The translations under genes were made by a program, and so were the position numbers. Under the pieces are notes generated by a model. The model saw nothing but the letters and a program-made list of their open reading frames with translations, did not search any database and had not been told where the DNA came from. Shown here in pieces: positions 41,146-64,000 of a stretch of DNA of 64,000 nt (positions are counted from its first letter, which is position 1; every line of letters starts with the position of its first letter). The stretch lies in IMG/VR virus record IMGVR_UViG_3300034073_005389, positions 62,001-126,000 of that record, one strand, 5' to 3'.

Positions 41146-43349
41146 TCAGGCGCCGATTACTACTGACTTGCGACCAGCAGCAACACCACGAGGATTGACG
41201 ATACCGATACCGATGATTTCGCTAACTACCCATCCTAATTTAAGCTGTTTTGGTTCGTCAGCAGGAAGTACTTCGATGTCTTGGCGCACGGGCATGACAC
41301 CGACGAATTCAGGATCAGCACAACCATAGATAGTGCCTGGGGGAACGATCTTTGATACCATGATATCGGTGCCCCAGATATGAGCGTAGAGACCGGTTTG
41401 TAGTACTTCACGCATGGTGACGGGATCGAAATCACCGCCGCCTACGCCTTGACCACCACCTGAACCCCACTTGAGGATATCGGTAAATTCATTGATGTTC
41501 ATGAAGTATTTGGTGGTTACGAGGTCCCAGCGATCAATTTGTTGTTTGATTTCTACTAAGTCTCTCTTGAGTAGACCAGCGTCAGCAATATCTGTTACGG
41601 TGTTTTCTACTGAAGCGGCGGCATCGAGGGCGGCGAAGACGTTGGCATCTTCTTGAGCCATGATTTCTTGACGAGCCTTCTGGACTGCACGGTCGATGAC
41701 GTTGAAGCGGCGACGCTTAACTTCAGCGATACGTACTGTGGGGTTGGCGTAGATTTCGAATTCAGGAACTACAACGCGATCACCGAATACGCGGCTTTCA
41801 GGACCGGTACCGTTGCTGCTGATTACTACAGCGGCAACATCGATATCACGATCATAGGTGGGCATGGTGCCTTGGGGTACATAGGCAGTTGTTAAAATTA
41901 ACGTTAGTTAATTTGATAAGTCATTTCTGCTTATCTCTTCATATCTCTATGAAGGTCAGACTGTATCACCATCACTTTTTTGTGACGATTGGCATTCTAG
42001 TCGTTGAGGATTGTGGCATTAATTTATACTGCATACATTCTACGACATGGGGTCTAATGATGTCGCTGAGTTTTTGAGTATTTTCTTTATTTATATTTAT
42101 CTGAGAGTATTCTTTATTTTTATAAGTATATTTCATAACATTTGAATTAATGTCAAAACATCTTTTTAAATAATCTCTTAAAATATAATTTTCTTCTTCT
42201 GTAAAGCCCATTGTTGCTAACCTGGCATTAACACCAGATTTTAAATTTCCATCATCTTGAAACCAAACAGCTAAACAAAGCGGAGTCATATATATGTCTA
42301 AATTTTTTGGCACATGTTTAACTCTTGAAGAGTCATAAAACATATTTGCAAAATAATTTAAATCTTTATGACAAATTGTTGCGGTTTGTAGCATGGTAGA
42401 ATTACCTCTTTTATCTTCATACTCTCTATGAGTATTGATAAAAGGATCTAACATAGCTATTTTCCAAAAAAAATATGGAGATTGTGCTTTACAGTGGCTG
42501 AAAGATAATTTAAAATTTCCATTAGGACTATCTTTATGTAAACAACCATCTCCTAACAGTGTACCAACAATAATTTGTTTTTGTATACTATTAATAGGCG
42601 TTTCTCTTAAGATATCATATTTTCTGGAAGATGAGACTGGTTCTCTATTATTTGCTTTTAATATCCTAGATATTGCGGGAGCAGATATCTCATACCAATT
42701 AGCAATATTTTTAATAGTTTCGCCATTATCAAATTTATTAACTATATCTTTTATTTGATCTTGAGTAAAATCAGAAACATATTTTTTTCTAAATTTTACT
42801 TTTTGATTTTTTAAAATTTGCCTTGTTTTTTCATAAGAAATATGAAGCTTTTCGGCAATTTCTTTAATAGTTAATCCAGATTCATAGAAATTAGAAATCT
42901 CTTTTTCCATTATGCCACTCTTTCCTGCTGATTGTCTATATCATCTTAATTCTGTTACTATAACTATTTTGAAATTAACTTCTGTGTATAATTTATAGAG
43001 TGTTATAGTGATTAAGCTTTTAGAGTTTCCAGCATATAGCCAATTTTTAGATCCACTACCCTCAGTTTAATGGATCGACTACAAGGGCGCGACGTGCAAT
43101 TCCATGATAGTCTAAGTTTCTGCGGATAGGATTGGCCATTGCTTGAGCCAAAGCAATTTTGCCGTCTTGTGTCTGGATGGCGCGAGAAATTAATTCGTCG
43201 CGTTTTTCATCTGACAATGAGGGTTGACCAGCTAATCCCATGTTTGAGGGGGTGTTTTCTTCTAAAATACTAGCGTATTTTACTAATGTATGAAGCGCAT
43301 CCTTTAGCGATGATGCGTTCATTTCGCCTTTGCTATTGAACATATTCAT
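41146..43349 (-). CDS. Major capsid protein, spliced: exon 1 43349..43070, exon 2 41879..41146, 337 aa
   Basis: GGAG RBS at 43357-43360. The join restores ARRALVVDPL-PQGTMPTYDRD. PEFEIYANP...RRFNVIDRA..KA..EIMAQED is HK97-fold-like. Raised GC/codon bias and a strong terminator. Confidence 0.85.
41880..43069 (-). mobile_element. Group I intron (1190 nt) in the major capsid gene
   Basis: P1: exon GAUCCAU pairs with GUGGAUC, giving a U-G wobble at the splice site. P10: GGGUA/UACCC. Core elements P AUGCUGGAAA, Q AAUCAGCAGG, R CUCAACGACUA, S GAUACAGUC; P3 UUGGC/GCCAA; terminal G at 41880. Confidence 0.92.
41972..42910 (-). CDS. Intron-encoded LAGLIDADG homing endonuclease
   Basis: Two HTH segments, IVGTLLGDGC and LAVWFQDDG. 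Starts just after element Q; its 3' end overlaps R/P3. Confidence 0.9.
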   Translation of the reverse strand: MEKEISNFYESGLTIKEIAEKLHISYEKTRQILKNQKVKFRKKYVSDFTQDQIKDIVNKFDNGETIKNIANWYEISAPAISRILKANNREPVSSSRKYDILRETPINSIQKQIIVGTLLGDGCLHKDSPNGNFKLSFSHCKAQSPYFFWKIAMLDPFINTHREYEDKRGNSTMLQTATICHKDLNYFANMFYDSSRVKHVPKNLDIYMTPLCLAVWFQDDGNLKSGVNARLATMGFTEEENYILRDYLKRCFDINSNVMKYTYKNKEYSQININKENTQKLSDIIRPHVVECMQYKLMPQSSTTRMPIVTKK

Positions 43350-43508
43350 TCGAGATCTCCGAGTTGTAAAAGAATTGTTTGCCAGCATTCGCCAGCTGAC
43401 ATGCAAAAATGCATGTTCTTATATCTAATAATTTAATATTACTTATATTAATTTCTATTATAAAAATGCATATTACGATATATGCTTGACAGCATCTTTG
43501 AGGAAATA

Positions 43509-44699: not shown

Positions 44700-45383
44700 T
44701 CAGGGTCCAACGGGTGGGTTGAAATAGAAGGTAACGAAGGTAAATTGACGTGGTGAAGCGCCTAAGCCTGAGGGGCTGTTTAGAGCGCTGACGAGGTAGC
44801 TAGGAGTATTGACTAATGAGCCATTGGTCTCGAAGTCAATTAAAGTAGCTACTACTGGAGCGCCACCTACTGCAGCAGGTGAGCCTACTGGAGTTAATTG
44901 TCCTGTTGAGGTATAGGTAAGGGGAGCGCCAGCTGATAGACCTACGTTGGTGGGTTGTAGACCGGTAGCAACAGCGGTATCAACTGCATCAAGTGATACA
45001 GCGTATACGCCGGGTTGGTGCCAGCAGGTTACTTTGCCTGAACCTGTAGCGGTGTTTGGTCCTAATACAACGCCTGAGGTAACTTTACCAACTGTACCAC
45101 CTACTACTGAACCGAAGAGGGTGCCGTAACCAGCAATACCTTCGTCAGCTAACATAAGAGGACGTGAAGTTGAAAGAAGATCAAAAGTTACAACTGTGCG
45201 CTTAGCAGTGCCTGATGGATTGACGTAACCGTCAAATACGTCAGCTGCAGCTAAATCAGGTGAGCTTAGGTTTAATGAAACAAAAGTTACTACTTCGCCA
45301 CCGAGGTAGCTGTTGATTTGTGTATCGTAACCGTCGAATTGACCGAGTGGGTTACCAGCTTGATTTACTAGTTTAAGAGCCAT
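44700..45383 (-). CDS. Putative capsid decoration/cement protein
   Basis: Upstream of the MCP gene with similar codon bias; TATGSGKVTCW motif; 2 DGY motifs. Confidence 0.55.
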   Translation of the reverse strand: MALKLVNQAGNPLGQFDGYDTQINSYLGGEVVTFVSLNLSSPDLAAADVFDGYVNPSGTAKRTVVTFDLLSTSRPLMLADEGIAGYGTLFGSVVGGTVGKVTSGVVLGPNTATGSGKVTCWHQPGVYAVSLDAVDTAVATGLQPTNVGLSAGAPLTYTSTGQLTPVGSPAAVGGAPVVATLIDFETNGSLVNTPSYLVSALNSPSGLGASPRQFTFVTFYFNPPVGP

Positions 45384-45489: not shown

Positions 45490-46716
45490 TTAAATTTCTG
45501 GAAGATCTGAAGATTGAGGGATTGTTGGTTTAACTTCTTGTTTAGGCTGTTCTTGTCTTCTTGACATACGTTCATTTACTTTATTTTTAACTTCTTGACC
45601 TTTTTCTAATAATTTAATAATTCTTTCTACTGAAGCTATATATGGATCCATTAATCTAATAATATTTTCTACTGCGGAATTAAATGGTGCCCAGCCACCT
45701 TCAATTGGCAATAGATCTGTAACTGAAGATCCAAGTCCTTTGTCTTCAAAACTTCTTTTTTCTGTATCAAATATTTCTATTCTTGTTTTGCCGCCAGCTG
45801 AAGTATATGTCTTTTCAAGAGATTTTTTAATATCTTTTATATCTAATAATTTTGCAAAAATTTCTTTTGCAGCTTCATCTCTGCCTCTAATATCTTCAAC
45901 ATTTTGATTTTTAGCAGCATCAACAGGATTTGTTTTTATTTGCGCTTGATCAATATTTTCTATTAATTTTTTAAATTTTAAATAAGATTCATCTAGCTCA
46001 ACAACCTTATCTGCTAAATAATTTAATTGTTCTTTAAATTGCAAACTTGGTTTTGCAGCAAAAAAAGATTGAAGCCAGCTTGGATTTGTCAATTTATTAA
46101 GCTCATCCATTAGTGCGCTATAATTTTTTTCATATCCTTCATCAGCAGCTGGTAATTTATTGGCTACATAAGCAGCACCCACTAAAGAAGCCAGTAATCC
46201 TGATATAACTTTTGTTCTTAATTTAAGAGCTTCTTTTTTAAGAGATTTTTTAGATTCTACTTCTTGTGCAACTGATTGTAAACAATTATCTGCTAATTTT
46301 CTTAATTTTTCTTTATTTCTATTATCTAAATCATTAGCTACTCTAACCAAAGATAATAAAAATTGTTTTTCAGCATATTTGCGTTGAGTTAGTAATCCAT
46401 CTGGATTTTTATTTACAATGCGTAAATTAATATTTTGTCTTTCAATGTTGTTTTCAACTAATCCATTTAATCTATCATAAGCAGGAGAAAGTACTACAGG
46501 CTCTTTATGAGCAATTTCCATAATATTATTTTTATATTTCATATCTGGAATTGTTTCTGGTTTTACTCCATACAATGCAGCTATAGCAGAAACATCTAAA
46601 GAATCTGCTCTAGGATTGTTTTCTAATGCTTTGAAACTTTTTTCAGAATCATTTGAAATAAGTTTTCTATCTTGAGCAATTTTAACAAATTCTTCAAAAA
46701 TGTCACTGCGTCTCAT
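45490..46716 (-). CDS. Putative internal head protein
   Basis: Helical; FVKIA and LKKEA motifs; one hydrophobic segment. Confidence 0.45.
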   Translation of the reverse strand: MRRSDIFEEFVKIAQDRKLISNDSEKSFKALENNPRADSLDVSAIAALYGVKPETIPDMKYKNNIMEIAHKEPVVLSPAYDRLNGLVENNIERQNINLRIVNKNPDGLLTQRKYAEKQFLLSLVRVANDLDNRNKEKLRKLADNCLQSVAQEVESKKSLKKEALKLRTKVISGLLASLVGAAYVANKLPAADEGYEKNYSALMDELNKLTNPSWLQSFFAAKPSLQFKEQLNYLADKVVELDESYLKFKKLIENIDQAQIKTNPVDAAKNQNVEDIRGRDEAAKEIFAKLLDIKDIKKSLEKTYTSAGGKTRIEIFDTEKRSFEDKGLGSSVTDLLPIEGGWAPFNSAVENIIRLMDPYIASVERIIKLLEKGQEVKNKVNERMSRRQEQPKQEVKPTIPQSSDLPEI

Positions 46717-46773: not shown

Positions 46774-47862
46774 TCATGCTTCTTTAGCTACATCATCAAT
46801 AAATTGATCTACTATTTCTTTTTTAGAATGATACATGCTTGGTATTAGTAATACATTACTACCTAAATTTCCCTGATTATAATTTAATATATTTTCTGCA
46901 ATAATATTAAATTTAGGAGATCTTCTTATAATAAAGTCTAAATTCTCTAATCCATTATATGTTTCTTTTGCAAATTCTACTAACAAATCTTTTATAGTAG
47001 AATCTGTAACATATATTCCTTTTATAGTCCAACTACTAGTAGAAGTATTGTATATATCTTTATCATAGTTAGGATTTAAAGGAAACTTCTTTTGAGTAGA
47101 AGTACTTGTAGCAGGAGTAGTAGATATATGCCTTTTTAAACTTTTATCTAATTCGTTTGGTTTACCCACTAATTTGCTAACTACACTACCAGCCGTTAGT
47201 AAACCAGCAGTAGTTAAAATAGTTTTAATTAACCAAGTTATTATTTTAATAACAGATCCAATAAATTTTCCTTGTTTAGGAACTAAAGCAGCCGCAGCAG
47301 CTGCTGCTGCCCCTGCCGCCCCTGCCGCCCCTGCCGGACCTGCTACTTTAATTAAACTTGTTTCATTGCGATATTGTATAAAAGCAAGCTTCATCATTCT
47401 AGCATCAAGTAAGGTAAATGATTCTGTTGCTAAAGATGAGGGATCTGATCCTGTCATAGCTTGTGTACTATCTTTTACTGCAGATGTAACTCTACTTTCA
47501 ATAGAATCCATTGAAATTTCTTTATTATCTTTAATATCTCCTATAATAGAAGATGATACTTTGTCTAATGCATTTTTAATATCAACTTTAAATACAGCAG
47601 CCCCAATAGATAAAATCCATTTTAACCATTTAAACCCCATACCATCTAAAATTTTATAGAGTGCGGCAGGTGCTAGCATAGAAATTACGCTAGTAGTTTT
47701 ATTATTAGGATCTATGTTTTGATCTACAAAATCTTTTACATATCCAATTAAAGAAGATAATAAAGCTCCTTGAGCCGATTTTTTAATCGGCTTATCTGTG
47801 ATTAATGATTCTACAATTAATCCATCCATGTAATATTTAATTTGACTGTTTCTTTTTTTCAT
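46774..47862 (-). CDS. Putative internal/ejection protein with hydrophobic segments
   Basis: Start MKKRNSQ at 47862; IKKSA and LIKVA motifs; amphipathic/TM-like helices and an Ala/Gly linker. Confidence 0.45.
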   Translation of the reverse strand: MKKRNSQIKYYMDGLIVESLITDKPIKKSAQGALLSSLIGYVKDFVDQNIDPNNKTTSVISMLAPAALYKILDGMGFKWLKWILSIGAAVFKVDIKNALDKVSSSIIGDIKDNKEISMDSIESRVTSAVKDSTQAMTGSDPSSLATESFTLLDARMMKLAFIQYRNETSLIKVAGPAGAAGAAGAAAAAAAALVPKQGKFIGSVIKIITWLIKTILTTAGLLTAGSVVSKLVGKPNELDKSLKRHISTTPATSTSTQKKFPLNPNYDKDIYNTSTSSWTIKGIYVTDSTIKDLLVEFAKETYNGLENLDFIIRRSPKFNIIAENILNYNQGNLGSNVLLIPSMYHSKKEIVDQFIDDVAKEA

Positions 47863-47863
47863 A

Positions 47864-49606
47864 TTACCTTGCTGGAGGTTTAGATTCTGCTTTCCAATTG
47901 CTAATTGCATTGGTTAATAAACTGTCGTTTGTTCTAGCAAAACTAATTTGACCCTTCATAGCATTATCTGAATCCCTATTAACAGGATCTTCAAAATATG
48001 AATTATATACTTCCATAATTCTATAAATTAAATCAGATAAATGTTTATTTAGTTTTTTCAAGGCGTAAAAGTAATTAAATAAGTTAGATTGAACATTCTT
48101 AATATCTGTCTTAAAATTATCCAAATCCACTCTTAAATTAAAGTTTTTCTTTGCAGGATCTAATAATAGTTTTTCTAAATTATTTATCGATTCTTCAATC
48201 TTAGGATTAGAATAAGCATACTCGTTTGGTAGTAATTTTTCTACTACGTCTAAAAAGTTTGCTATAGCAATTAAATCAATGGTCCCAGGTCTTAATGGTC
48301 TAGCACGAATTAATTCTGTTATACCAGCACCACCAACTCCCATAGCGCCACCAGCACCTCTACCGCCCCTTCCTCCTGCTCCTCCTGCACCACCGGGACC
48401 ACCACCGGCACCACCGGCACCACCACCGGCACCACCGGCACCACCACCGGCACCACCGGCTCCTGCTCCAGCACCACCACCACCGCCAGCACCTACTCCA
48501 ACACCAGTTTGCCCAACTGCACCTGTAGTAGTGCCTGGACCTGTAACAGAACAAGGCTTGTCATCAGCTCCCATAATCTGAGAGCCATATTGTTGAATAG
48601 ATTTTAAATATAAATCTACAATTTTATCATAATCTGGAGCTATTCTCTTATCATACATCGCTGCTTTGTTTTTTAAATAAGAAGCCCTTTTGTACAAAAT
48701 ATGTACTGCTAAGCAAGGATCCGATTTAGGAGCTAACACTGGAGAAGTTACAATCATTTTATCAGGAGTCTTATATTTAATCATCATATCCTTTAACCAA
48801 TTGAAAAAGGCTGATTGATCTGCTAAATCTTTAACAGTTAATTGTACAGGTAAACCAGTAAAAGTAGGCGCTCTCTCTAATCCATTTTCCCAAGTCTCTA
48901 TAGATAATTCTTTAGATGGGAAAGCATCTACCAATGCATCTTGATTTAAAGTAGATTTAGCCGCTTCAGGACCTGCTTTAGATGCAATTGGCTCTCCAGT
49001 TAATTTGCTGTTAATTTCTTCAATAATTGCTTTTAACATGACCTCTAGTACTTTATTACTACGAGCATCATTGTCTCTTAAATATGATAAATATCCTTTT
49101 AATGGATCTTTTAAAGCATATACATCTATTTTATTAATATCCCTACTAACAGGATCTCTGTCTTTTCTATCTCTAGGAAAACTATTAAACTCTAAAGCAC
49201 CAGCATCAATAGCCGCTTGTTTTTCATCGGCTTTCCAAGCAAAACGATTTCCTTGCCAAGTTAATTTGTTCTCTGCTGCCCATTGAATAAAATCACCTAA
49301 TGTTCTAAAATCTTGCACATTGGCAACTGGAGCAGGCTTAGTAGGATCTGTTCCTAATGGAATTCCTTTGAACTCTGGAGGTGCGTTTTTAGGATCAATT
49401 ATTCTTTGTAAATTAACTAATAATGGCTTAGCTGCACGATAAGCATTTAAATCTACAGCCGGTCCTGTAGTAGTGGTTTGAGTAAAAGATGTTACTGCAG
49501 GGGCTGCCGCAGGAGGTTGTGCTAGAGCTGATTTTTTTAATTGATCACCACCAGCTATATTGAATAATTGTTCTAATAAATTTCGATCTCTATATAAAAA
49601 AGACAT
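47864..49606 (-). CDS. Putative internal head protein with poly-Gly/Ala linker
   Basis: LKKSA motif followed by a Pro/Ala stretch; long GGAGG tract. Confidence 0.5.
   Translation of the reverse strand: MSFLYRDRNLLEQLFNIAGGDQLKKSALAQPPAAAPAVTSFTQTTTTGPAVDLNAYRAAKPLLVNLQRIIDPKNAPPEFKGIPLGTDPTKPAPVANVQDFRTLGDFIQWAAENKLTWQGNRFAWKADEKQAAIDAGALEFNSFPRDRKDRDPVSRDINKIDVYALKDPLKGYLSYLRDNDARSNKVLEVMLKAIIEEINSKLTGEPIASKAGPEAAKSTLNQDALVDAFPSKELSIETWENGLERAPTFTGLPVQLTVKDLADQSAFFNWLKDMMIKYKTPDKMIVTSPVLAPKSDPCLAVHILYKRASYLKNKAAMYDKRIAPDYDKIVDLYLKSIQQYGSQIMGADDKPCSVTGPGTTTGAVGQTGVGVGAGGGGGAGAGAGGAGGGAGGAGGGAGGAGGGPGGAGGAGGRGGRGAGGAMGVGGAGITELIRARPLRPGTIDLIAIANFLDVVEKLLPNEYAYSNPKIEESINNLEKLLLDPAKKNFNLRVDLDNFKTDIKNVQSNLFNYFYALKKLNKHLSDLIYRIMEVYNSYFEDPVNRDSDNAMKGQISFARTNDSLLTNAISNWKAESKPPAR
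48330..48510 (-). repeat. GC-rich tandem repeat encoding (G/A)n
   Basis: Alternating ccaccggca / ccaccaccggca units. Confidence 0.85.
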
Positions 49607-52192: not shown

Positions 52193-52262
52193 TACACGCC
52201 TCAATAAGTTAAATTATTTCTATAATATACCAAATTATAGAAAGAGTCTATTAAATAAATGT

Positions 52263-53435: not shown

Positions 53436-53475
53436 ATGTTCCTCCAACTTCATATATATCATCAAAATCAAAATT

Positions 53476-55067: not shown

Positions 55068-55445
55068 TCAAGGTTCTTCTTCGAAGACTTCTTGGAAGAC
55101 ATCTTCGACTAAAATATCATCTGCCATATTTATGTCTGGCATATTAAATACGGTTCCATGATTTTTTAAATTTTTAACCATTTTATCAGAAGTTAATTTT
55201 TTAGTATGACTATCTGATACTTTGGTGGGATTTTTAGGTTTACGGTGTTTGGTGGCAATTTTGTGTAAAATATGTAGTAATTGATCTGCATGAGCGGTGA
55301 AGCCACTGGTTTCTAGCACATCGATAGCAGAGTTAACATAATCTACAGCTTGAGTAATGTCAGATAAATCTTGATTACTGGCTTTTTTAACTAATTGTTG
55401 ATGCATGAGTTCAACAATTTCATTTTCTAATTTTGGTTTTAGCAT
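55068..55445 (-). CDS. Small putative prohead core/internal protein
   Basis: LVKKA and LHKIA; helical module AIDVLETSGFTAHADQL. Confidence 0.5.
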   Translation of the reverse strand: MLKPKLENEIVELMHQQLVKKASNQDLSDITQAVDYVNSAIDVLETSGFTAHADQLLHILHKIATKHRKPKNPTKVSDSHTKKLTSDKMVKNLKNHGTVFNMPDINMADDILVEDVFQEVFEEEP

Positions 55446-55465: not shown

Positions 55466-55693
55466 TTAAAACTTTTTTAATTTAGAAGCAAAGCTAGTTA
55501 TTACTTGAGTAATTTCATTTGCTTCTTGGTTCATTCCGGCTTTGTCAAAAATATCGGCAGCTTTATGCAAATAATCAATTGTTCTGGCAAATTTATTAAA
55601 AGCATATTTATTTTCTAGTTGGTTATTAACTAGTTGTTTTTCCATTGTGCGATAAAGTTCGTTGGAAATATCTTTTTCATCATCGTAAAACAT
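55466..55693 (-). CDS. Small putative prohead core/internal protein
   Basis: FNKFA; AADIFDKAGMNQEANEI; paralogous to the 125-aa neighbour. Confidence 0.5.
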   Translation of the reverse strand: MFYDDEKDISNELYRTMEKQLVNNQLENKYAFNKFARTIDYLHKAADIFDKAGMNQEANEITQVITSFASKLKKF

Positions 55694-56553: not shown

Positions 56554-59500
56554 TCAGAACATTCTCTTTGAAGTCTTAGCGAATGCTGCAGACAATTGTG
56601 ACCAATCATCAGATTGTGCGGTGTTGACTTCACCTGAACCAATCATACCTACTTGTGGCATACGTCCAGCTTCTTTTTGTAGAGTTGGTGCATGTTTAGC
56701 TACTACTCTCTTTAATGACTGGAATGACTCATCATTAAACTTCATGATTTCGTCTACTTGAGCTGAGACAGCATAGCTATCATTGACGCAAAGACCACGA
56801 TCTACCATTTCATGAGCTAATTCATAGGCTCTAGCTAATTTAACACGATAACCATTTAATTCATCTTCTACTTGAGCTTTGACGTGTTCTTTTACTAATT
56901 CGCTAGCAAATTCTGAACCACCGTCTACTTGACCGTAGTATTGCTTGTAGTACTTAACTGCGGCAGGATCTAAGCCTTCTGCTACTAAAGCGGGGAAGTC
57001 AGCAGTATCAAGCTTGCCTTCGCTAACTAAACGAGCAATTGCTTCTGCTTCTTTGCGAACTTTAACTGGAGCAGTAGCAACGTCCATCATCTTACGGCTT
57101 CTTTGTTCGACTGTTTCTACTAGACCTAATTCATCGCTAGGCTTGACATCAAGTTTAGTTTGACCATTGGTAAGTCTGTGTGCTTGATCTAACATATCGC
57201 TAAATTCTGCTTTTGACATATCGTGTAATTCTCCATCATCCATCTTACCAAGGGCGTCTGCAGCAAGTTTGGCGCGAAGAGCAGAGCGACCACTCTTGGT
57301 GTCAAATGCAGTGGCTTTCTTAACTGCAACTGTTTTGCCAGGATTTGCACTCATTGCATCATTTACCTTTGATGCATCATCTACATAAACCATATCGCTA
57401 TCCATATCGTTAGTATCACCGTCATCATCGTATGACATGAGGTCATCGGCGCTGCTTTCATCTGACGTGAATAAATTTTCATTTAAGCCAGAACCCAATG
57501 GCATATTTAATAAGTCTGCAAGATCTGATTCGGAACCTTGAGCAGATTTCTTTAGAGCTGCTTTTCTACGTTGTGCTGTCTTTTTCAATGAAGCCTCCAT
57601 TTGTGCACGTTTGACAAGAGCCTTGGTGCCACGAGCATATTTAACAAAGGCTGTCATTAATTTTAAACCATCAGCGATAGCTGTTTTAGCTTCTGCAAAA
57701 GCATCTGAAGCTAATGTATTTACTAATTCTTTATTAGCTCTGTTTACGCTACCATTTTTGTGAATAGTAGATAGCATGCCTAATTCTTGATAGTGATCAT
57801 TTAATTCTGCAATTGATTCTTTCATAGCGCGAGTTAATGCGCCATTTAATTCTTTGCGAAGTGTGTTGAGAGTAGATACGCTAAAGCTAGATGCTGCTGT
57901 AGCTAATTCTCCACCAGCTTCTGCACCGGCTTCAGGAACTTCTGCGCCAGCTTCAGGGGCTTCTTTGCCTAATTCTTCAATGGCTCCCATTTCAGCTTTT
58001 TCACCAGTAAGGGCTCTTACTGCCTCTACTAGATCTGAGCTAAGGTCTCTTACCTTTTCAGATAGTCTAAGAGCTGTTTCTTTAGGATCACCTTTCATAC
58101 CCTCATCTTCTACATCCTCTTCGCCAGCAGCTGGTGCGGCAGGAGCAGCTGCGCCCATATCAGCAGGTGGTGCAGCAGGAGCAGCAGCAGCAGGAGGAGC
58201 GGCTGGGGCAGGAGGAGCAGGAAGAGCAGGAGGAGCAGCTTGAGCTTGTCTTACTAGTGTGCGAACTCCATCAGGACCATATGATTTTACTTTATCAAGT
58301 AATCTGGCTCCAAAGTCTTTTGTAGCAATAGAATCATACATCATATTAGTATTGCCACCAGATAATTCACGAACTGATGCTGTAAGTAATAGTTTATCTC
58401 CAAGAAGAACTTGCCAACCGCTGTTTTCAAAATTAGTAGTACCGTCTAAGTTAGCTGCTTTTACAAATCTTGCTTTTAGACCTGCGCGAGCTAACATCTG
58501 CTTGCGCTTTAGTTCATTTGCCTCATCAGAAGAAGCAGGTGAAGGGTGTAAACTATTTACATCACCAACGCCAGGAAATGGCTTCTGTCCTACCATTTGC
58601 TTGTCTTCTGAACGAGCATCCATATTTAATGAATCAACTGGATATTTAACTTTTCCAGGGGTGGGTTCATTTACACCACCGCCACCTTGATAATAAGCTC
58701 TTTTATCTTCTAATGCTTGTTTTGCCATGTTGACAATAGCAGTACGACGCATAGCGCGCTCTTCAGCTTCTGCACGAGCTAACATCTTTTTACGCTGTAA
58801 CTCATCAGACTCATCAGATGAAGCAGGTGATGGATGTAATCCTGTTACGTCGCCAACTCCAGGGAATGGTGATTGACCTACCATTTGCTTGTCACCATTC
58901 ATTCTCATATCCTCATTTAAAGGATCTTTTGTATACTTGGCTTGACCTGGGGTAGGCTCATTAACGCCACCGCCACCTTGAAAATAACCTCTTTTATCAA
59001 AATTTGATCCAGACATATGTTGTTCCTCTTGTATGTTTGATGTATTTGCTAACTTATTCAATTTGTTTTTCATTAATTGTAACTTCGTTTCAATAGCAGC
59101 GGTAACTTCACGAAGTTCATTAATAGAATTTAAATCTGTAATGTCTTCTAAATTATTAGAAGCATATCTTGCATTTTGCGGGATACCCGGAGGCATCATG
59201 TTGTTAGAATCTTGAGTATCTGTTTTTAATGCTCCATTATTAGCATTTTCTTTCATTTGTTTTACTTGAGATAAAATATTCTGTATTTCTTGCTCAAAAC
59301 CATCTAAAGTATTTGACTCACATGTGAAATTAGCTGTATCACCAGGCTGATCTCCTTGAGTGGAAATACTAGCATGGAATACATCGGCAAATTTATTTAA
59401 CTCATTAGATTTATTTTCTACATAAGTATTTAATGTGTTAGCTGCTGCAATAATATGCTTTATATGAGCTTTTGGATCTGCCCCATTAACTACAATTGAT

Positions 59501-61302
59501 AATTCAATTGGAGCCAAATCAATATTAATTTCTCCGTAACAAGTTTTTTTGCGCATATGGTCACAAAAATCATGTTCTGCTTTAGCTACTCTTCCACAGT
59601 CGCTACAAATGGCTCGACCTACTGCCGTACCCATTGACACACTGGTTTGCATCATAGATGCGACCTTCTTAGCTAAATCTGGATAATTTGCCTTGTCTAG
59701 GGCGCATAAAGCAACTACTCTTTTTAAATTGCGATCATAATATGTATCTACAATAAAACCACGAGTATGATCTACTGAACTAGATTTATGATCAATGCAC
59801 AATGGCTTATGTACCCATTTTTTATGGGCTTTTATTAGCTCTTCTTCAGGGAAAATATCGCCGTTGCAGTTAGAAACTACAATCCAGTTAGCTACATAAG
59901 AATTGTCTTCCTCTACTTCTAAATTATAAACATCGCCACTATAAAATACTTTTTCTACTCCTAAAATAGAGTGAATACAGTATTGATCAATAAATTTATT
60001 TAAATTTTTATTTTTAGAAGTTTTATTAAGATTTAATTTTTCTGAGTTTTTAATGATCTTTTGACCATTAGTAGAATTAATTCTTATTCTAAATACATTA
60101 TGCTTACCATTTATCTCTCTTCCATTAATTTGAGAAGATGAGGGAGGTGTTTCATAAATAGTATTATGAACTCCTAAGCTATATAACATTAATCTAACTT
60201 GAGAAGCTAAATTAGGAGAAATAGTAGTTCCAGTGATTCTAGCGGTATCTTTTCCTATGCTTCCATCACCTTCTAACCAGCCTAAAATAAATTGTTGTTT
60301 TACTTCATCTGAACCGAATACTAATTCAGGGCTGAGTGTCTTAGTAAGGCTATATTCTCCTACATGATTTAAAAAGAACTTATAAATATCTTTTTGATAA
60401 GCAGTTACTGTACATTTATGATTTTTCTCATCTACCTTAACAGTAACATTTACATTATTAAATTCTGACTGTAATAGTTGCTTAGTAAGTAAACCAAGTG
60501 TATTGTATTCATCAGCCGAATATGTAAAACAAACAACATTTCTGTGTTTGTTATGAGTTTTGTTTAAACTACCTTCTGCGGCGTATAAGCCTAATAATCT
60601 AGCTTGATTCGGCGTAAGATCTGAATCTACTTTTTTATTTAAATTAATAGATAATAGAAAATCTTTTAAATTTAAATCTTTGGCGGAAACAAATGAAAAT
60701 TCTTTATTTGTATTTTTTTGATTCCATATTCTAAATTTAGAAGTAGTAGATTTCCATTTATTGTTAGAAACTTGTAAACGATAAAGTGGATGATTATCAG
60801 TAGTAGACAATTTAATATTGTTATTAACATTAAATTGAAGTAAGTTGTCATGATGAGGAGTAATAAACTTTCTTAATACTTTTTTGGCTCTACCTTTATG
60901 GGTAATAACCATATCTCCTGGCTCTACATCTTCTATGTTTTTAACTGCTCCATTTTCTAAAAGAATTTTGGTTCTTGGAGGAAAACAATTTTTATATGGT
61001 TTGATATTTGGATCATTTGTTTGCCAACGCCAAGTATTACCAGTTTTATCCCAACCTACTTGAACTGCTTCTCCTTTAACATTTAATTTAGGAGTGCCAT
61101 CTTCATTTAAAGCAGCAGCTTCGGCAGCATGCATCATAACAGCTGAGAAATAAAGAAAATCATTTGCTTTAGGAGCAATCTTTTTTAAAGCAGATGCAGT
61201 TTTTTTAAAACTATCAAGCATTTCTTGATTTACAGCAGGAATACAAGAATCTGCATTCTCGATTCTGCTAATTTCGTGAGTTTCGCCTATTTTGATAAAC
61301 AT
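56554..61302 (-). CDS. Prohead protease-scaffold polyprotein containing an intein
   Basis: The extein reads KN-CNGDIFP..EL...KPLCIDH...RGFIVD...VSMGT...CSDC...CDH...ELSIV..GADP, the His/Ser order of phage maturation proteases. Long coiled-coil C-terminus. Confidence 0.75.
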   Translation of the reverse strand: MFIKIGETHEISRIENADSCIPAVNQEMLDSFKKTASALKKIAPKANDFLYFSAVMMHAAEAAALNEDGTPKLNVKGEAVQVGWDKTGNTWRWQTNDPNIKPYKNCFPPRTKILLENGAVKNIEDVEPGDMVITHKGRAKKVLRKFITPHHDNLLQFNVNNNIKLSTTDNHPLYRLQVSNNKWKSTTSKFRIWNQKNTNKEFSFVSAKDLNLKDFLLSINLNKKVDSDLTPNQARLLGLYAAEGSLNKTHNKHRNVVCFTYSADEYNTLGLLTKQLLQSEFNNVNVTVKVDEKNHKCTVTAYQKDIYKFFLNHVGEYSLTKTLSPELVFGSDEVKQQFILGWLEGDGSIGKDTARITGTTISPNLASQVRLMLYSLGVHNTIYETPPSSSQINGREINGKHNVFRIRINSTNGQKIIKNSEKLNLNKTSKNKNLNKFIDQYCIHSILGVEKVFYSGDVYNLEVEEDNSYVANWIVVSNCNGDIFPEEELIKAHKKWVHKPLCIDHKSSSVDHTRGFIVDTYYDRNLKRVVALCALDKANYPDLAKKVASMMQTSVSMGTAVGRAICSDCGRVAKAEHDFCDHMRKKTCYGEINIDLAPIELSIVVNGADPKAHIKHIIAAANTLNTYVENKSNELNKFADVFHASISTQGDQPGDTANFTCESNTLDGFEQEIQNILSQVKQMKENANNGALKTDTQDSNNMMPPGIPQNARYASNNLEDITDLNSINELREVTAAIETKLQLMKNKLNKLANTSNIQEEQHMSGSNFDKRGYFQGGGGVNEPTPGQAKYTKDPLNEDMRMNGDKQMVGQSPFPGVGDVTGLHPSPASSDESDELQRKKMLARAEAEERAMRRTAIVNMAKQALEDKRAYYQGGGGVNEPTPGKVKYPVDSLNMDARSEDKQMVGQKPFPGVGDVNSLHPSPASSDEANELKRKQMLARAGLKARFVKAANLDGTTNFENSGWQVLLGDKLLLTASVRELSGGNTNMMYDSIATKDFGARLLDKVKSYGPDGVRTLVRQAQAAPPALPAPPAPAAPPAAAAPAAPPADMGAAAPAAPAAGEEDVEDEGMKGDPKETALRLSEKVRDLSSDLVEAVRALTGEKAEMGAIEELGKEAPEAGAEVPEAGAEAGGELATAASSFSVSTLNTLRKELNGALTRAMKESIAELNDHYQELGMLSTIHKNGSVNRANKELVNTLASDAFAEAKTAIADGLKLMTAFVKYARGTKALVKRAQMEASLKKTAQRRKAALKKSAQGSESDLADLLNMPLGSGLNENLFTSDESSADDLMSYDDDGDTNDMDSDMVYVDDASKVNDAMSANPGKTVAVKKATAFDTKSGRSALRAKLAADALGKMDDGELHDMSKAEFSDMLDQAHRLTNGQTKLDVKPSDELGLVETVEQRSRKMMDVATAPVKVRKEAEAIARLVSEGKLDTADFPALVAEGLDPAAVKYYKQYYGQVDGGSEFASELVKEHVKAQVEDELNGYRVKLARAYELAHEMVDRGLCVNDSYAVSAQVDEIMKFNDESFQSLKRVVAKHAPTLQKEAGRMPQVGMIGSGEVNTAQSDDWSQLSAAFAKTSKRMF
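58483..58995 (-). repeat. Two ~75-aa internal repeats in the protease polyprotein
   Basis: KR[GA]Y[FY]QGGGGVNEPTPG...DKQMVGQ.PFPGVGDV..LHPSPASSDE..EL.RK.MLARA at 58771-58995 and 58483-58704. Confidence 0.9.
59869..60987 (-). mobile_element. Intein (373 aa) with LAGLIDADG endonuclease
   Basis: Block A CFPPRTKILL; block B TTDNHP; LLGLYAAEGS and FILGWLEGDGS; block F VYNLEVEEDNSYVAN; ends VSN/C(+1). Confidence 0.92.
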
Positions 61303-62072: not shown

Positions 62073-62726
62073 CTATCCTTGCACTAAGTTATTACGTTCT
62101 TTAATAGTATCATTTAATTGATCTTCTCTTCTATTAAATAATTCTAATATTAATGGTTTTTTGTGTTCTAATTTCATATTTAATTCATCGCCAACGGCAT
62201 CTACCCAGCTGCTAGCTAAAATGTTTTCTTGAACATATGAAATAATTCTTTCTTCTACTAATTTATCTATTTCTTCAGATTTGTCTTGAATTTTTTCAAT
62301 GGAAGAGACAATGTTTTTAGTAAATTCTTTAGAATTTAAATCATCAAATAAATCTACGAAATCATTTACAGCTTCTTCTAGTTCATCTACTGAATTAATA
62401 TATGATTTCATTATTTTAATAATTTGAGTATCAGAGCCGAAAGTTTGCATAACTTTTACACATTTAAAAGCGACTTGTTTAAAGTCGTTAAAGTTTTTAA
62501 CAGACTCATCACGATATCTTCTAATAGCGGCTCTGGTTTTAATAATTTCTTCAGTAGGAACTTCTGGGTTATCTTTAAAAGATGTTTTCATGATATTCAA
62601 ATGATCACTTGCTTTTTTCAATTTTTTATTAGCATAATTAAAGCAAATAATAGCATTTTTTGCCTGATGCTTTTCAGCAACAGTCACGTCATAGCTCATT
62701 TGAACAGAAGCGGCATTTTTTTTCAT
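62073..62726 (-). CDS. Helical hypothetical head-associated protein
   Basis: 217 aa, coiled-coil; starts MKKNA. Confidence 0.5.
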   Translation of the reverse strand: MKKNAASVQMSYDVTVAEKHQAKNAIICFNYANKKLKKASDHLNIMKTSFKDNPEVPTEEIIKTRAAIRRYRDESVKNFNDFKQVAFKCVKVMQTFGSDTQIIKIMKSYINSVDELEEAVNDFVDLFDDLNSKEFTKNIVSSIEKIQDKSEEIDKLVEERIISYVQENILASSWVDAVGDELNMKLEHKKPLILELFNRREDQLNDTIKERNNLVQG

Positions 62727-62746: not shown

Positions 62747-63520
62747 CTAATCATAAAAGAAGCCAGAGTAGTTTTCTACTGGACCTACTCCACGAATTCC
62801 TGCATCGTTATTAAATAATCCTACTAAAGGTACTATATCTTTGTTTTCAGCAGGTTGTACAGGTCTATTATAATTTTCTCTAGTAGGAGATTGATCATTT
62901 ATATACACATACAATGCATCCATAGGATATTGCCTTGTAGGAGTTAAATATGGGGCGAATGATCCTCGTCTGCCTTCATCTAAAAAAGTGTCTCTATTAT
63001 CTGAAATATATTCTCTTTGATTAGATACAATATTAGATCCATCTAATTTAGACATTAAATTATCTTTTTCTAATTTAGAGTTTCTAATTAATTTTTTAAA
63101 CAAAGTAACGACTTTAGGATCTAAACCAACTCCAAATCCTAATGAAACGGCTTCATTAATAGCATCTTCTGGGTCCATTCCTAAATATTTTGTTTTAAAT
63201 AATCCAATTAATAATCCAGTGCGGTCTTTTCCTGCATGACAATGTACGAAAGTAGGAGCATTATCTAATAAAAGTTCTTTTAGATTAAATTTTAATAATT
63301 TGAAAATATCTTCATATAAAGAATCAAATTCAATTGGAATAATAACTTGTTCAATATCTAATAGTTTACAAGCTCTTGAAATTCTATCAGCATCTAGTTG
63401 ATCTAAGCTAATAATTTTATTAATTTTTAACTTTTCTTTTAATAAACGAACATCGTCAGGGCTAGGAGCACTGCCTCGAAATAATAAATTAGGGATTACT
63501 TCTACAAAGCGATGTATCAT
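62747..63520 (-). CDS. Protein tyrosine / dual-specificity phosphatase
   Basis: LFRGSAP and the P-loop VHCHAGKDRTG (CX5R). Confidence 0.88.
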   Translation of the reverse strand: MIHRFVEVIPNLLFRGSAPSPDDVRLLKEKLKINKIISLDQLDADRISRACKLLDIEQVIIPIEFDSLYEDIFKLLKFNLKELLLDNAPTFVHCHAGKDRTGLLIGLFKTKYLGMDPEDAINEAVSLGFGVGLDPKVVTLFKKLIRNSKLEKDNLMSKLDGSNIVSNQREYISDNRDTFLDEGRRGSFAPYLTPTRQYPMDALYVYINDQSPTRENYNRPVQPAENKDIVPLVGLFNNDAGIRGVGPVENYSGFFYD

Positions 63521-64000
63521 AAATACCTAACTAAGTTGTTAAGTACTTCTCTAATATACCTAGGATTATGGTTGAAAAGTACAGTTTTAACGAAGGTGAT
63601 TGATTGCCCTAAAGAAGATGAGGCGGGCATTTTTTTAGAACCTAGCTCATTTTCATTTAAATAATAAAATTTTTGTTTTAGTCTATTAATAGATTTTTGT
63701 CTTTTTGCTGGAGAGATTCTATTTAGGATAAATTTAACAATATTAGCTAAATAGTTGCCAACTGTTTTTGGATCACCTAAACTAGGTAGGGAGGCGGCTA
63801 CTTTGACTAATTTATTTTTTATTTTAATTTTATATAATTTTTTAAACTTTTTTAAAGCATGATCTAAGGCAACATTAGGAACATTCTTCATTTTGCTTTT
63901 AACAGCTTGATCAAAATAAAATTTATATTCTTTTATAAACTCATTAGCAATATCGGGATCAATTTTGTTTAATTCTCTCATGATAGCAGATAAAGAAAAG
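63517..64000 (-). CDS. Hypothetical protein (probably begins beyond the window's right edge)
   Basis: The frame is open upstream of ATG 63981 to the edge; LVKVA motif; overlaps the phosphatase start. Confidence 0.55.
   Translation of the reverse strand, partial: FSLSAIMRELNKIDPDIANEFIKEYKFYFDQAVKSKMKNVPNVALDHALKKFKKLYKIKIKNKLVKVAASLPSLGDPKTVGNYLANIVKFILNRISPAKRQKSINRLKQKFYYLNENELGSKKMPASSSLGQSITFVKTVLFNHNPRYIREVLNNLVRYL

What the first reader, a model, noticed from the sequence alone, without database searches (positions are those of the whole stretch)
41146..64000. Hydrophobic-x-K-x-A motif marks head-interior proteins: probable maturation-protease cleavage code
Seen: about 30 matches to [FILVM]-x-K-x-A, concentrated in the head module. 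Examples: MCP LVKYA (residues ~22-26); FVKIA, LKKEA, IKKSA, LIKVA, LKKSA, IKKYA, LEKIA, LVKKA, LHKIA, FNKFA, MKKNA, LVKVA; and about 11 in the protease polyprotein (FKKTA, LKKIA, LNKFA, LNKLA, FVKAA, FVKYA, LVKRA, LKKTA, LKKSA, VRKEA, LQKEA). Many sit near N-termini or at sharp composition switches (LKKSA|LAQPPAAAP, LIKVA|GPAGAAG). Established: T4 gp21 and phiKZ gp175 cleave many head proteins at short motifs ending in Glu. Inference: this phage uses a Lys-x-Ala specificity. Its distribution is nearly mutually exclusive with DGY, suggesting an inside/outside two-tag code.
Basis: partly seen in the sequence, partly recalled or inferred. Interest (0 to 1): 0.72.

Follow-up and report, generated by a model that had tools for sequence, protein, structure and literature searches.

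The report
Conserved Leu-x-Lys-x-Ala tag in phage head proteins
The head-assembly genes of this uncultivated 361-kb freshwater/subsurface jumbo phage carry a real, conserved five-residue tag ([Leu/Phe/Met]-x-Lys-x-Ala) that most likely marks where the phage's own head protease cuts, but no cutting has been observed.

Summary
[FILVM]-x-K-x-A occurs 38 times in genes at window 43-64 kb and 10 times in the other 41 kb.

- **Enrichment.** Genome-wide, the head module holds 60 matches against 24.8 expected from composition. The tail module is at chance (11 vs 11.9) and the rest of the genome about 1.2x.
- **Refined motif.** It is [L/F/M]-x-K-x-A: 49 observed against about 12 in local shuffles (z about 11). 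No other residue is comparably enriched at any of the three positions.
- **Placement.** It lies within 50 residues of the N-terminus in 14 of 24 head ORFs, including the major capsid protein (residues 22-26). It flanks the catalytic domain of a T4-gp21-fold prohead protease. It also marks linker junctions in the roughly 1,000-residue extension fused to that protease.
- **Conservation.** Sites are retained three times more often than control motifs in orthologues. The motif recurs in phage G and in 134 metagenomic polyproteins.

The best reading is a prohead-protease recognition and cleavage motif (confidence about 0.6). Cleavage itself and the scissile bond are inferred, not shown. The "DGY inside/outside code" is over-read: DGY simply marks tail and shell-accessory proteins. 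This is a new variant of a known kind and can be tested by mass spectrometry on cultivable phage G.

The parts
56554..61302 (-). 1,582-aa prohead protease polyprotein: N-extein, intein, protease core, then a roughly 1,000-aa helical and low-complexity (scaffold-like) extension. It holds 14 motif matches.
   Evidence: phrog_18299 head maturation protease on residues 477-586. Pfam intein/LAGLIDADG_3 on residues 103-478. Family alignment A1 with invariant D-H and S-M-G. AF2 model best matches T4 gp21 (Z 7.5), then herpesvirus proteases. Motif count 12 vs 2.0 expected for [LFM].K.A.
59869..60987 (-). Intein (residues 106-478) with a LAGLIDADG endonuclease domain, inserted in the conserved K-P-Y-K-N / [C/S]-N-G-D-I-F stretch of the protease. 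It contains no motif match.
   Evidence: The orthologue L003 lacks it and L005 has a shorter insert at the same point.
61174..61209 (-). Double N-terminal site of the protease, FKKTA (residues 32-36) and LKKIA (39-43, followed by Pro), just before the first beta-strand. It is a candidate self-activation site.
   Evidence: F32, K34, A36, A43 and P44 are at least 90% conserved in 26 homologues of 46-73% identity. First site present in 94 of 112 polyproteins. Same arrangement in phage G gp19. T4 gp21 is activated by N-terminal self-cleavage (PMC9958956).
59386..59400 (-). LNKFA (residues 635-639), directly after the protease catalytic domain. It is a candidate release site.
   Evidence: Retained as FKKLA in L005. 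L-x-K-[LFI]-[AST] is conserved at this point across alignment A1. Phage G gp19 has LEKVA and LLKIA after its domain.
59047..59061 (-). LNKLA (residues 748-752), before the twice-repeated Gly/Pro-rich module.
   Evidence: Retained in L003 and L005. L-[DN]-K-L-A is conserved in long homologues in A1.
58453..58467 (-). FVKAA (residues 946-950), at the junction between the repeat modules and the next folded-looking domain.
   Evidence: Present in 82 of 112 polyproteins at the homologous place. It is FVRAS in L005.
57541..57648 (-). Tandem array of four sites about 10 residues apart: FVKYA, LVKRA, LKKTA, LKKSA (residues 1219-1254).
   Evidence: The first two are retained in L005 and in 95 and 90 of 112 polyproteins.
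56668..56703 (-). VAKHA and LQKEA (residues 1534-1545), 37 residues from the C-terminus. It is a candidate site that releases a C-terminal tail.
   Evidence: ILKQA at the same place in L005. Site present in 91 of 112 polyproteins. Among the 134 polyproteins, the distance from the last site to the C-terminus has a 10th-25th percentile of 36-40 residues.
43068..43349 (-). Major capsid protein exon 1. Motif LVKYA (residues 22-26) is at 43272-43286.
   Evidence: phrog_2522. 51% identity to phage G gp27. Exon limits come from the uninterrupted orthologue L003. The site is LTKYA in L006. Phage G's MCP starts about 37 residues downstream of the site (16 residues lie between the Ala and the first aligned residue, which matches G residue 4) and lacks it.
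41146..41879 (-). Major capsid protein exon 2 (mature HK97-fold body). It has no motif match.
45490..46716 (-). 408-aa head protein. N-terminal site FVKIA (residues 10-14) is at 46675-46689.
   Evidence: Retained as FAKIA, FLKIA and FVKLA in L003, L006 and L005 at 29-52% overall identity.
46774..47910 (-). 378-aa head protein. Sites are IKKSA (47773-47787), MMKLA (47383-47397), and LIKVA directly before a Gly/Ala tract (47341-47355).
   Evidence: IKKSA is retained in L003 and L006, and MMKLA in L003 and L005.
47864..49606 (-). 580-aa head protein. N-terminal site LKKSA (residues 23-27, 49526-49540) lies directly before a Pro/Ala tract.
   Evidence: LYKSA in L003 and LVKKA in L006.
49615..50619 (-). 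334-aa head protein. N-terminal site IKKYA (residues 13-17) is at 50569-50583.
   Evidence: IKKYA in L006, IKKTA in L010, LLKRA in L005.
50642..52204 (-). About 516-aa head protein. Sites are LEKIA (52130-52144) and LHKHA (51980-51994).
   Evidence: Both are retained in several of five lineages, with K-to-R changes in two.
55068..55445 (-). 125-aa head protein. Sites are LVKKA (55380-55394) and LHKIA (55254-55268).
   Evidence: LHKIA is retained in L003, L005 and L010.
55466..55693 (-). 75-aa head protein. Sites are FNKFA (55586-55600) and LHKAA (55556-55570).
62073..62726 (-). 217-aa protein whose first five residues are the motif (MKKNA, 62712-62726).
   Evidence: MIKRA at residue 1 in L005. 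The same Met-first form occurs in one paralogue (MYKVA) and in L010 (MDKTA, MFKQA).
63517..64000 (-). 245-aa protein that runs past the window end. LVKVA is at 63796-63810. A second site, IVKSA, lies just outside the window.
44700..45383 (-). 227-aa protein in the position of phage G's decoration protein. It has no K-x-A and two DGY.
53476..54165 (-). 229-aa, highly conserved (61-96% identity) shell-accessory-like protein. It has no K-x-A and one DGY.

Best explanation
**What the region is.** Window 41-64 kb, continuing to about 79 kb of window numbering, is the head-morphogenesis module of a 361-kb jumbo phage. The phage comes from subsurface and freshwater metagenomes and is distantly related to phage G.

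**What the motif most likely does.** [L/F/M]-x-K-x-A (Arg sometimes replaces Lys in relatives) is most likely the recognition and cleavage motif of the phage's own prohead protease. That protease is a His/Ser enzyme of the T4 gp21 / herpesvirus assemblin fold. It is made as a 1,582-aa polyprotein that also carries an intein.

**Inferred sequence of events:**
1. The intein splices out.
2. Head proteins enter the prohead, guided by short conserved amphipathic N-terminal leaders.
3. The protease activates itself at the near-invariant F-x-K-x-A before its first strand.
4. It frees itself from the fused scaffold-like extension and cuts that extension at linker junctions.
5. It removes the leaders of the capsid protein and of about a dozen other head proteins.

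**Shown:** the motif's specificity, its restriction to the head module, its placement, its conservation, and the protease fold.

**Inferred:** that the motif is cut, and by this enzyme. The scissile bond cannot be read from sequence. I lean to cleavage after Ala, because Ala is the best-conserved position and the next residue is mostly Q/G/S/N, as with the herpesvirus P1 Ala. Cleavage after Lys (T4-like, hydrophobic P3 and charged P1) remains open.
For: **Enrichment and specificity**
- Head module 60 vs 24.8 expected; tail 11 vs 11.9.
- Local shuffles give z about 8; the refined motif gives 49 vs 11.7, z about 11.
- Only L/F/M, K and A are enriched at their positions, 4.05x.
- The excess holds separately in the polyprotein (12 vs 2.0), the paralogue family (15 vs 4.2) and the 19 other head ORFs (22 vs 5.9).

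**Placement**
- 14 of 24 non-endonuclease head ORFs have a site in the first 50 residues, vs 46 of 450 elsewhere (P=4.6e-8).
- Sites lie on both sides of the protease domain and 37 residues from the polyprotein end.
- Four paralogues have variable leaders ending at an invariant Ala-Gln junction, plus an invariant internal F-x-K-x-A after an indel-rich linker.

**Conservation**
- 30 of 64 site-orthologue pairs are retained, vs 47 of 300 for 14 control motifs (P=2.9e-7).
- Per-position identity is 0.78 / 0.72 / 0.72 at the three motif positions, vs 0.17-0.39 for their neighbours.

**Replication**
- L003 35 vs 10.1, L005 18 vs 8.8, L006 9 vs 4.5.
- Phage G gp4-gp21 22 vs 6.8, with sites in the protease gp19 and at the N-termini of gp9, gp13, gp20 and the portal.
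- 134 polyproteins of clusters at 50% identity: 867 vs 228.

**Enzyme**
- phrog_18299.
- Invariant D-H and S-M-G.
- Best structural matches are T4 gp21 (Z 7.5), then about 30 herpesvirus protease entries.

**Precedent**
- T4, phiKZ and SPN3US proteases cut head proteins at short motifs, remove N-terminal propeptides and process themselves (PMC5694885; PMC9958956).
Against: - No proteomic, N-terminal or structural datum shows any of these bonds to be cut. No RNA or protein data exist for this phage.
- The complex prediction of the protease with the capsid-protein leader gave no answer.
- The fold match is in the middling range (Z 7.5; model pLDDT 68).
- Several matches sit in predicted helices, and the leaders have a conserved 3-4-residue periodicity. 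That fits a docking helix at least as well as an extended protease substrate.
- Three sites, one of them invariant, are followed by Pro, which argues against cutting after Ala at those sites.
- Some matches are not conserved and are probably chance.
- The relatives are homologous, so counts across them are not independent.
- The genome also encodes two ClpP-like proteins elsewhere.
Confidence: 0.6

Rival explanations
1. The motif is part of a capsid-targeting or scaffold-docking helix. It directs proteins into the prohead, as a T4 CTS-like signal does, and is not itself a cleavage site.
For: Leaders show conserved hydrophobic positions at -20, -17, -13, -10 and -4 relative to the Ala, i.e. an amphipathic helix. 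The protease N-terminal sites are predicted helical. A few matches lie at extreme C-termini, where nothing could be removed after Ala.
Against: It does not explain several observations. Sites bracket the protease domain. Sites occur in tandem in linkers. Sites occur at the very first residue with no upstream helix (MKKNA, MYKVA, MDKTA). Only three alternating positions are conserved, with non-conserved residues between them. In T4, targeting and cleavage coincide, so this rival is not exclusive.
Confidence: 0.2
2. The motif is cut, but by another protease: the phage's ClpP-like proteins or a host enzyme.
For: Two ClpP-family genes lie at genome 197.4-198.6 kb. [quoted passage not shown]
Against: The ClpP genes are far from the head module. 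The motif flanks the gp21-fold protease's own domain and is near-invariant in that protein family. ClpP does not use short internal cleavage motifs (own knowledge).
Confidence: 0.07
3. It is a by-product of helix-favouring composition (Leu, Lys, Ala) or of shared ancestry among duplicated head genes, with no function of its own.
For: Head proteins are richer in Lys and Ala. A mild excess (O/E about 1.2-1.4) exists genome-wide. Four paralogues and the internal repeats inflate the counts.
Against: Local-composition shuffles do not reproduce it (z 8-11). Equally helical controls (L-x-E-x-A, L-x-Q-x-A, A-x-K-x-L) are at or below expectation. It occurs in unrelated proteins. The three positions are conservation peaks in orthologues.
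Confidence: 0.05

Closest known systems
T4 gp21 prohead protease system (cuts at [L/I]-x-E; capsid-targeting leaders on internal proteins)
   Same: Closest solved fold to the protease here. One enzyme, a short motif, N-terminal leaders on many head proteins, scaffold degraded to pieces, and N-terminal self-activation (PMC9958956). Hydrophobic residue two positions before a charged one.
   Different: T4 cuts after Glu. Here [LFM]-x-E-x-A is not enriched (O/E 0.8-1.0), the charged residue is Lys/Arg, and an Ala two residues later is the best-conserved position. Here the protease is fused to the scaffold-like region and carries an intein.
phiKZ gp175 / SPN3US gp245 giant-phage prohead proteases ([S/A/G]-x-E motif)
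   Same: Jumbo phages in which many head proteins and paralogue families are processed at a short motif. There are extra motif copies inside propeptides and C-terminal self-cleavage of the protease (PMC5694885; PMC10052503).
   Different: Different motif chemistry (Glu at P1). No detectable sequence relation to this protease family beyond the fold. In those phages cleavage is demonstrated by mass spectrometry, which is lacking here.
Herpesvirus assemblin / pUL26 protease-scaffold polyprotein (release and maturation sites, [V/L/I]-x-A then Ser; own knowledge)
   Same: Same fold class (Z 5-6). Protease fused N-terminally to a scaffold, one site directly after the protease domain and one a few tens of residues from the C-terminus. 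A strictly conserved Ala in the site.
   Different: In herpesviruses the hydrophobic residue is two, not four, positions before the Ala, and Ser follows it. Here Lys sits two positions before the Ala, and Q/G/S/N follow. The scaffold role of the extension is inferred only.
Phage G (Donellivirus gee) gp19 protease and neighbouring head genes
   Same: Nearest cultivated relative: MCP 51% and protease core about 33% identical. Same double site before the first strand. Motif after the protease domain and at N-termini of small head proteins.
   Different: In G the protease is a separate 300-aa protein, its MCP lacks the leader and the site, and there are no inteins or introns here. I could not read the phage G virion mass-spectrometry paper.

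Membership tests
Prohead (capsid maturation) serine protease of the T4 gp21 / herpesvirus assemblin fold | The characteristic fold | tested here: met
   AF2 model of the intein-free orthologue (pLDDT 68). Best VIA-align match is T4 gp21 5jbl, Z 7.5, 133 residues, rmsd 3.2 A. Ranks 2-31 are all herpesvirus proteases at Z 4.3-6.1. Z is in the range the tool calls middling, so this is moderate support, strengthened by the uniform list of matches.
Prohead (capsid maturation) serine protease of the T4 gp21 / herpesvirus assemblin fold | Conserved catalytic His and Ser | tested here: inconclusive
   D131-H132 and S183-M184-G185 are invariant in 26 homologues and present in phage G gp19. I could not superpose them on the gp21 active site because no coordinates are returned.
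Prohead (capsid maturation) serine protease of the T4 gp21 / herpesvirus assemblin fold | Encoded in the head module between the portal and the major capsid protein | tested here: met
   Gene order is portal (window numbering 78963-81971), paralogues, protease 56554-61302, head proteins, MCP 41146-43349. The order matches phage G.
Prohead-protease cleavage-motif systems (T4, phiKZ, SPN3US type) | Short motif over-represented in head proteins, at N-terminal propeptides and in the scaffold | tested here: met
Prohead-protease cleavage-motif systems (T4, phiKZ, SPN3US type) | Motif copies flanking the protease's own catalytic domain (self-processing) | tested here: met
   Sites at residues 32-43 and 635-639. 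They are conserved family-wide and in phage G. This is sequence-level only.
Prohead-protease cleavage-motif systems (T4, phiKZ, SPN3US type) | Cleavage C-terminal to Glu | tested here: not met
   Hydrophobic-x-E-x-A and related Glu motifs are at or below expectation in the head proteins. The enriched motif has Lys/Arg and Ala.
Prohead-protease cleavage-motif systems (T4, phiKZ, SPN3US type) | Mature virion proteins that begin or end at the motif | not testable with these tools
   There are no proteomic data for this phage. The runs holding it are DNA metagenomes. The phage G mass-spectrometry paper is not held.
Herpesvirus pUL26-type protease-scaffold polyprotein | Protease fused to a scaffold, with a site after the protease and a site near the C-terminus | tested here: inconclusive
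   The architecture and site positions fit. The fusion is the rule in the clade: 134 of the best 150 representatives are at least 1,000 aa. The scaffold function of the extension is inferred only from its composition and position.
Herpesvirus pUL26-type protease-scaffold polyprotein | [V/L/I]-x-A followed by Ser consensus | tested here: not met
   The hydrophobic residue is at -4, not -2. Position -2 is Lys/Arg. Position +1 is mostly Q/G/S/N.
T4-type capsid targeting sequence | Homologous N-terminal leader of about 10 residues, shared by several internal proteins and ending in a cleavage site | tested here: inconclusive
   N-terminal placement and a conserved amphipathic pattern are seen. The leaders differ in length (0-45 residues) and are not alike beyond the motif. 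Targeting cannot be tested here.

The most novel reading that the evidence does not exclude
A large, uncharacterised clade of jumbo phages, reaching from phage G to this Bacteroidota-associated environmental lineage, would use a gp21-fold prohead protease. The clade gave about 2,300 profile hits, and protease-scaffold polyproteins are the rule among the best 150. Its processing code would be hydrophobic-x-[K/R]-x-A, cut after an obligatory Ala as in herpesvirus assemblin, and the protease is fused to its scaffold as in herpesviruses. That would make the clade a mechanistic bridge between phage and herpesvirus capsid maturation. It would also let the packaged, processed proteome of uncultivated relatives be predicted from sequence alone.
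Probability: 0.25. Interest if true: 0.65.

Novelty: new variant of a known kind. Interest (0 to 1): 0.5.

Why it matters
Processing motifs of prohead proteases are known for only a few model phages, and all of the giant-phage examples cut after Glu. A Lys/Ala-type motif would be a new variant of a known kind. If it is confirmed, three things follow:
- It would give a sequence-only way to recognise head-internal and processed proteins, propeptide boundaries and scaffold segments in a large clade of uncultivated jumbo phages whose head genes have no annotation.
- It would broaden the known specificity range of the gp21/assemblin fold.
- It would sharpen the comparison between phage and herpesvirus maturation, which share a protease-scaffold fusion and an Ala-containing site.

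The hypothesis is directly testable, because the same motif occurs in cultivable phage G.

Tried and rejected
- **Complex prediction.** The protease core with the capsid-protein leader gave 'no answer' (score 0.01). It is not evidence either way.
- **Natural gene fissions.** In L010 and L011 the polyprotein appears split into 3-4 genes. The piece ends diverge in the way frameshifts do, and one contig is labelled 3x coverage. The best 150 representatives are almost all full-length fusions, so I did not use the gene boundaries as evidence.
- **More relatives of the upstream paralogue family.** Two collection scans and one protein search found only near-identical copies.
- **'Jug' gut phage identity.** I first suspected it from genome size, introns and inteins. 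I rejected it because the sequence is held by subsurface and freshwater metagenomes.
- **Phage G virion mass-spectrometry paper.** It is not held in the library. Other phage G papers give no cleavage sites.
- **Family searches.** Pfam and PDB sequence searches of the protease found no family. Megablast against phage records found nothing.
- **More distant MCP relatives.** The uncultured 485-kb phage LR745208 shows several N-terminal matches. Tunturi_5 has one, in its MCP. PaBG has no pattern. So the motif does not extend to the whole MCP family.
- **DNA-level explanation.** Rejected on codon usage.
- **Rfam.** No intron at gathering score in 40-64 kb.

Full report
**What the region is**

The window is bases 62,001-126,000 of a single 361,490-bp, 33% G+C virus record. 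Window 1-41 kb encodes large tail, baseplate and fibre-type proteins. From 41 kb onward, on the minus strand, lies the head module.

- **Major capsid protein (MCP).** It is 51% identical to phage G gp27. The gene is split by a 1.19-kb intervening sequence that carries a LAGLIDADG endonuclease ORF. Exon 1 is 43068-43349 and exon 2 is 41146-41879.
- **Protease.** The 1,582-aa ORF at 56554-61302 matches a head-maturation-protease PHROG on residues 477-586. It holds an intein with a LAGLIDADG domain at residues 106-478.
- **Homing endonucleases.** Several free-standing genes interrupt the module.
- **Beyond the window end.** There follow a four-member paralogue family (729-1,526 aa) and the portal.
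- **Source and host.** The sequence is held by subsurface and freshwater metagenomes. Protease homologues come from bins labelled Cytophagaceae and Flammeovirgaceae.

**Checking the observation**

With a non-overlapping ORF set, the window has 48 matches to [FILVM]-x-K-x-A. Of these, 38 are in genes at 43-64 kb, and 14 of those are in the protease ORF.

On a whole-genome ORF set of 479 ORFs:

| Region | Observed | Expected from each protein's composition |
|---|---|---|
| Head module (window 41-79 kb) | 60 | 24.8 (P=1.7e-9) |
| Tail module | 11 | 11.9 |
| Rest of genome | O/E about 1.2 | |

Shuffling residues within 15- or 30-residue blocks keeps local composition. It gives about 21.5 matches against 57 observed (z about 8).

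The hydrophobic position is really L/F/M: 49 observed against 11.7 (z about 11). I/V at that position is at chance, 8 against about 10. Scanning all 20 residues at each of the three positions shows that only L/F/M, K and A are enriched, at 4.05x. Equally helix-favouring variants are at or below expectation: E, Q or R for K; S, E or L for A; reversed order; shifted spacing.

The excess holds separately in three subsets:
- the polyprotein, 12 against 2.0;
- the paralogues, 15 against 4.2;
- the 19 remaining head ORFs, 22 against 5.9.

Codon usage at the sites equals background, so the signal is at the protein level.

**Where the sites are**

Fourteen of 24 non-endonuclease head ORFs have a match in their first 50 residues. 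Elsewhere the figure is 46 of 450 ORFs (P=4.6e-8).

In the polyprotein the sites lie at:
- residues 32-36 and 39-43, just before the first strand of the protease;
- 635-639, just after the catalytic domain;
- 748 and 946, at junctions of repeat modules;
- 1219-1254, four copies about ten residues apart;
- 1534-1545, which is 37 residues from the end.

The intein has none.

In the four paralogues, leaders of 0-29 residues end at an invariant Ala-Gln junction, preceded by LLKVA, FNKLA, MYKVA or IIVTA. An invariant F-x-K-x-A follows an indel-rich linker.

Several proteins start with the motif itself (MKKNA, MYKVA; MDKTA and MFKQA in a relative). So nothing upstream of the hydrophobic residue is required.

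**Conservation**

Related head modules were fetched from viral and metagenome contigs (L002-L006, L010, L011). Per-protein identity to the window ranges from 25% to 99%.

- The N-terminal sites of the MCP and of the 408-, 378-, 580-, 334-, 516- and 125-aa proteins are retained in lineages where the surrounding sequence has diverged. So are most polyprotein sites.
- In the distant lineages, 30 of 64 site-orthologue pairs keep the strict motif. For 14 control motifs the figure is 47 of 300 (P=2.9e-7).
- Around eight N-terminal sites, per-position identity is 0.78, 0.72 and 0.72 at the three motif positions. Their immediate neighbours score 0.17-0.39.
- Further peaks lie at -10, -13, -17 and -20, indicating an amphipathic leader. 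Conservation is low for 20 residues after the site.
- Ala is the best-kept position, 68% against 37% background (P=8e-5). Lys is often replaced by Arg.

**Replication in relatives**

| Sequence set | Observed | Expected |
|---|---|---|
| L003 | 35 | 10.1 |
| L005 | 18 | 8.8 |
| L006 | 9 | 4.5 |
| Phage G gp4-gp21 | 22 | 6.8 |
| 134 polyproteins (at least 1,000 aa), [LFM]-x-K-x-A | 867 | 228 |
| Same polyproteins, Arg form | 248 | 85 |

- Phage G's protease gp19 has the same double site before its first strand and two sites after its domain. Its gp9, gp13, gp20 and portal carry N-terminal sites.
- The profile search of 1.8 billion representatives found 2,307 relatives of the protease. Of the best 150, 134 are at least 1,000 aa long, so the protease-extension fusion is the rule.
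- In those polyproteins the Glu, Ser and reversed controls are at about 0.8-1.2x.
- In an alignment of 112 of those sequences, the N-terminal, 946-type, 1219/1229-type and C-terminal sites are present in 82-95 sequences.
- These sequences are related, so the counts are not independent. The controls were measured on the same sequences.

**The enzyme**

The protease has no Pfam or PDB sequence match. In 26 homologues of 46-73% identity, D-H and S-M-G are invariant, as are F32, K34 and A36 (at least 90%) and A43-P44.

An AlphaFold2 model of the intein-free orthologue has pLDDT 68. It aligns best with T4 gp21 (Z 7.5, 133 residues). About thirty herpesvirus protease entries follow, at Z 4.3-6.1. 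That Z range is only moderate, but the list of matches is uniform.

T4 gp21 is activated by self-cleavage of an N-terminal segment that blocks its active site (PMC9958956). T4, phiKZ, 201phi2-1 and SPN3US proteases all cut after Glu at short motifs. They remove N-terminal propeptides and process themselves (PMC5694885).

**Interpretation**

The most economical reading is that [L/F/M]-x-[K/R]-x-A is the processing motif of this protease family. Under this reading the protease:
- activates itself N-terminally;
- frees itself from the fused scaffold-like extension;
- cuts that extension at linker junctions and releases a C-terminal tail;
- removes leaders from the MCP and about a dozen other head proteins.

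The overall plan resembles both T4 (leaders plus a motif) and herpesvirus pUL26 (protease fused to a scaffold, one site after the protease and one near the C-terminus). None of the cuts is shown.

The scissile bond is open.
- **For cutting after Ala:** Ala is the most conserved position. The following residue is mostly Q, G, S or N. Ala-Gln is invariant at two family-wide sites. Herpesvirus enzymes require Ala at P1 (own knowledge).
- **For cutting after Lys:** this register puts the hydrophobic residue at P3 and a charged residue at P1, as in T4. Three sites, one of them invariant, have Pro after the Ala.

The main rival is that the leaders are docking or targeting helices. It is supported by their periodic conservation. 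It does not explain the sites that bracket the protease domain, the tandem linker sites, or the sites at residue 1. It may well coexist with cleavage, as in T4.

**The DGY claim**

DGY is over-represented genome-wide, 72 against 15.7 expected. It is concentrated in tail and fibre proteins and in two shell-accessory-like proteins (44700-45383 and 53476-54165) that lack K-x-A. The exclusivity is real but follows protein class. Nothing indicates that DGY is a sorting tag.

**Verdict**

The finding is a new variant of a known kind of system, and it awaits one straightforward proteomic test in phage G.

Noticed in passing
window 41880-43067 (-): The MCP gene is interrupted by a 1.19-kb intervening sequence carrying a LAGLIDADG homing-endonuclease ORF (41972-42910). 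There is only a sub-threshold group I intron match (RF00028, 25.6 bits, E=4e-4) at 41937-42069. Orthologues L003, L004 and L006 have an uninterrupted MCP.
   Followed up: partly
window 59869-60987 (-): An intein with a LAGLIDADG domain sits inside the protease at a conserved K-P-Y-K-N / [C/S]-N-G-D stretch. It is absent in L003, and L005 has a shorter insert at the same point. Many of the 150 best family representatives also carry an insert of about 370 aa there.
   Followed up: partly
window 40389-40967, 43482-44678 (+), 52263-53471, 54213-55040 (+), 61310-61909: Five free-standing homing-endonuclease-type genes (HNH, GIY-YIG, endonuclease VII-like) are scattered through the head module, two of them on the opposite strand.
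   Followed up: no
window 62747-63520 (-): A protein-tyrosine / dual-specificity phosphatase-like protein (Pfam Y_phosphatase3 and Y_phosphatase2, E about 2e-7) is encoded inside the head module. It is conserved in L005, L010 (there fused to the next gene's product) and L011. It may be a packaged enzyme.
   Followed up: no
whole window, mainly 13-36 kb, plus 44700-45383 and 53476-54165: The tripeptide DGY occurs 72 times genome-wide against 15.7 expected. It is concentrated in tail and fibre proteins and two shell-accessory-like proteins. The cause is unknown; it may be a recurring beta-structure element.
   Followed up: partly
beyond the window end: L009 14963-17971 (window numbering 78963-81971): The portal protein (1,002 aa) has an insertion of about 420 aa relative to phage G gp14. 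The insertion gives weak hits to families known for intein-bearing members. A triple K-x-A cluster at residues 525-543 lies inside that insertion.
   Followed up: partly
genome 152-157.5 kb (L015) and 286-289 kb (L016), outside the window: There are secondary clusters of K-x-A-rich ORFs (10 vs 3.0 expected at 152-157.5 kb). The 837-aa ORF at 286,179-288,692 has sites at residues 6 and 90. No PHROG match. These could be further packaged proteins encoded away from the head module.
   Followed up: partly
L001 (phage G) gp5, gp8-gp10, gp12, gp13, gp17, gp20: Several small phage G head-region proteins begin with similar basic leaders of the form x-R-L-K-K-[T/I/V]-[A/K/S]. This suggests a shared N-terminal signal in that phage.
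   Followed up: no
window 47864-49606 and 46774-47910 (-): Long Gly/Ala and Pro/Ala low-complexity tracts sit inside two head proteins, directly after or between motif sites. The polyprotein has similar tracts near residues 1030-1130.
   Followed up: no
L010 and L011: In two metagenome contigs the polyprotein appears broken into 3-4 ORFs whose ends look frameshifted. This is probably assembly error in low-coverage contigs, not real gene fission.
   Followed up: yes
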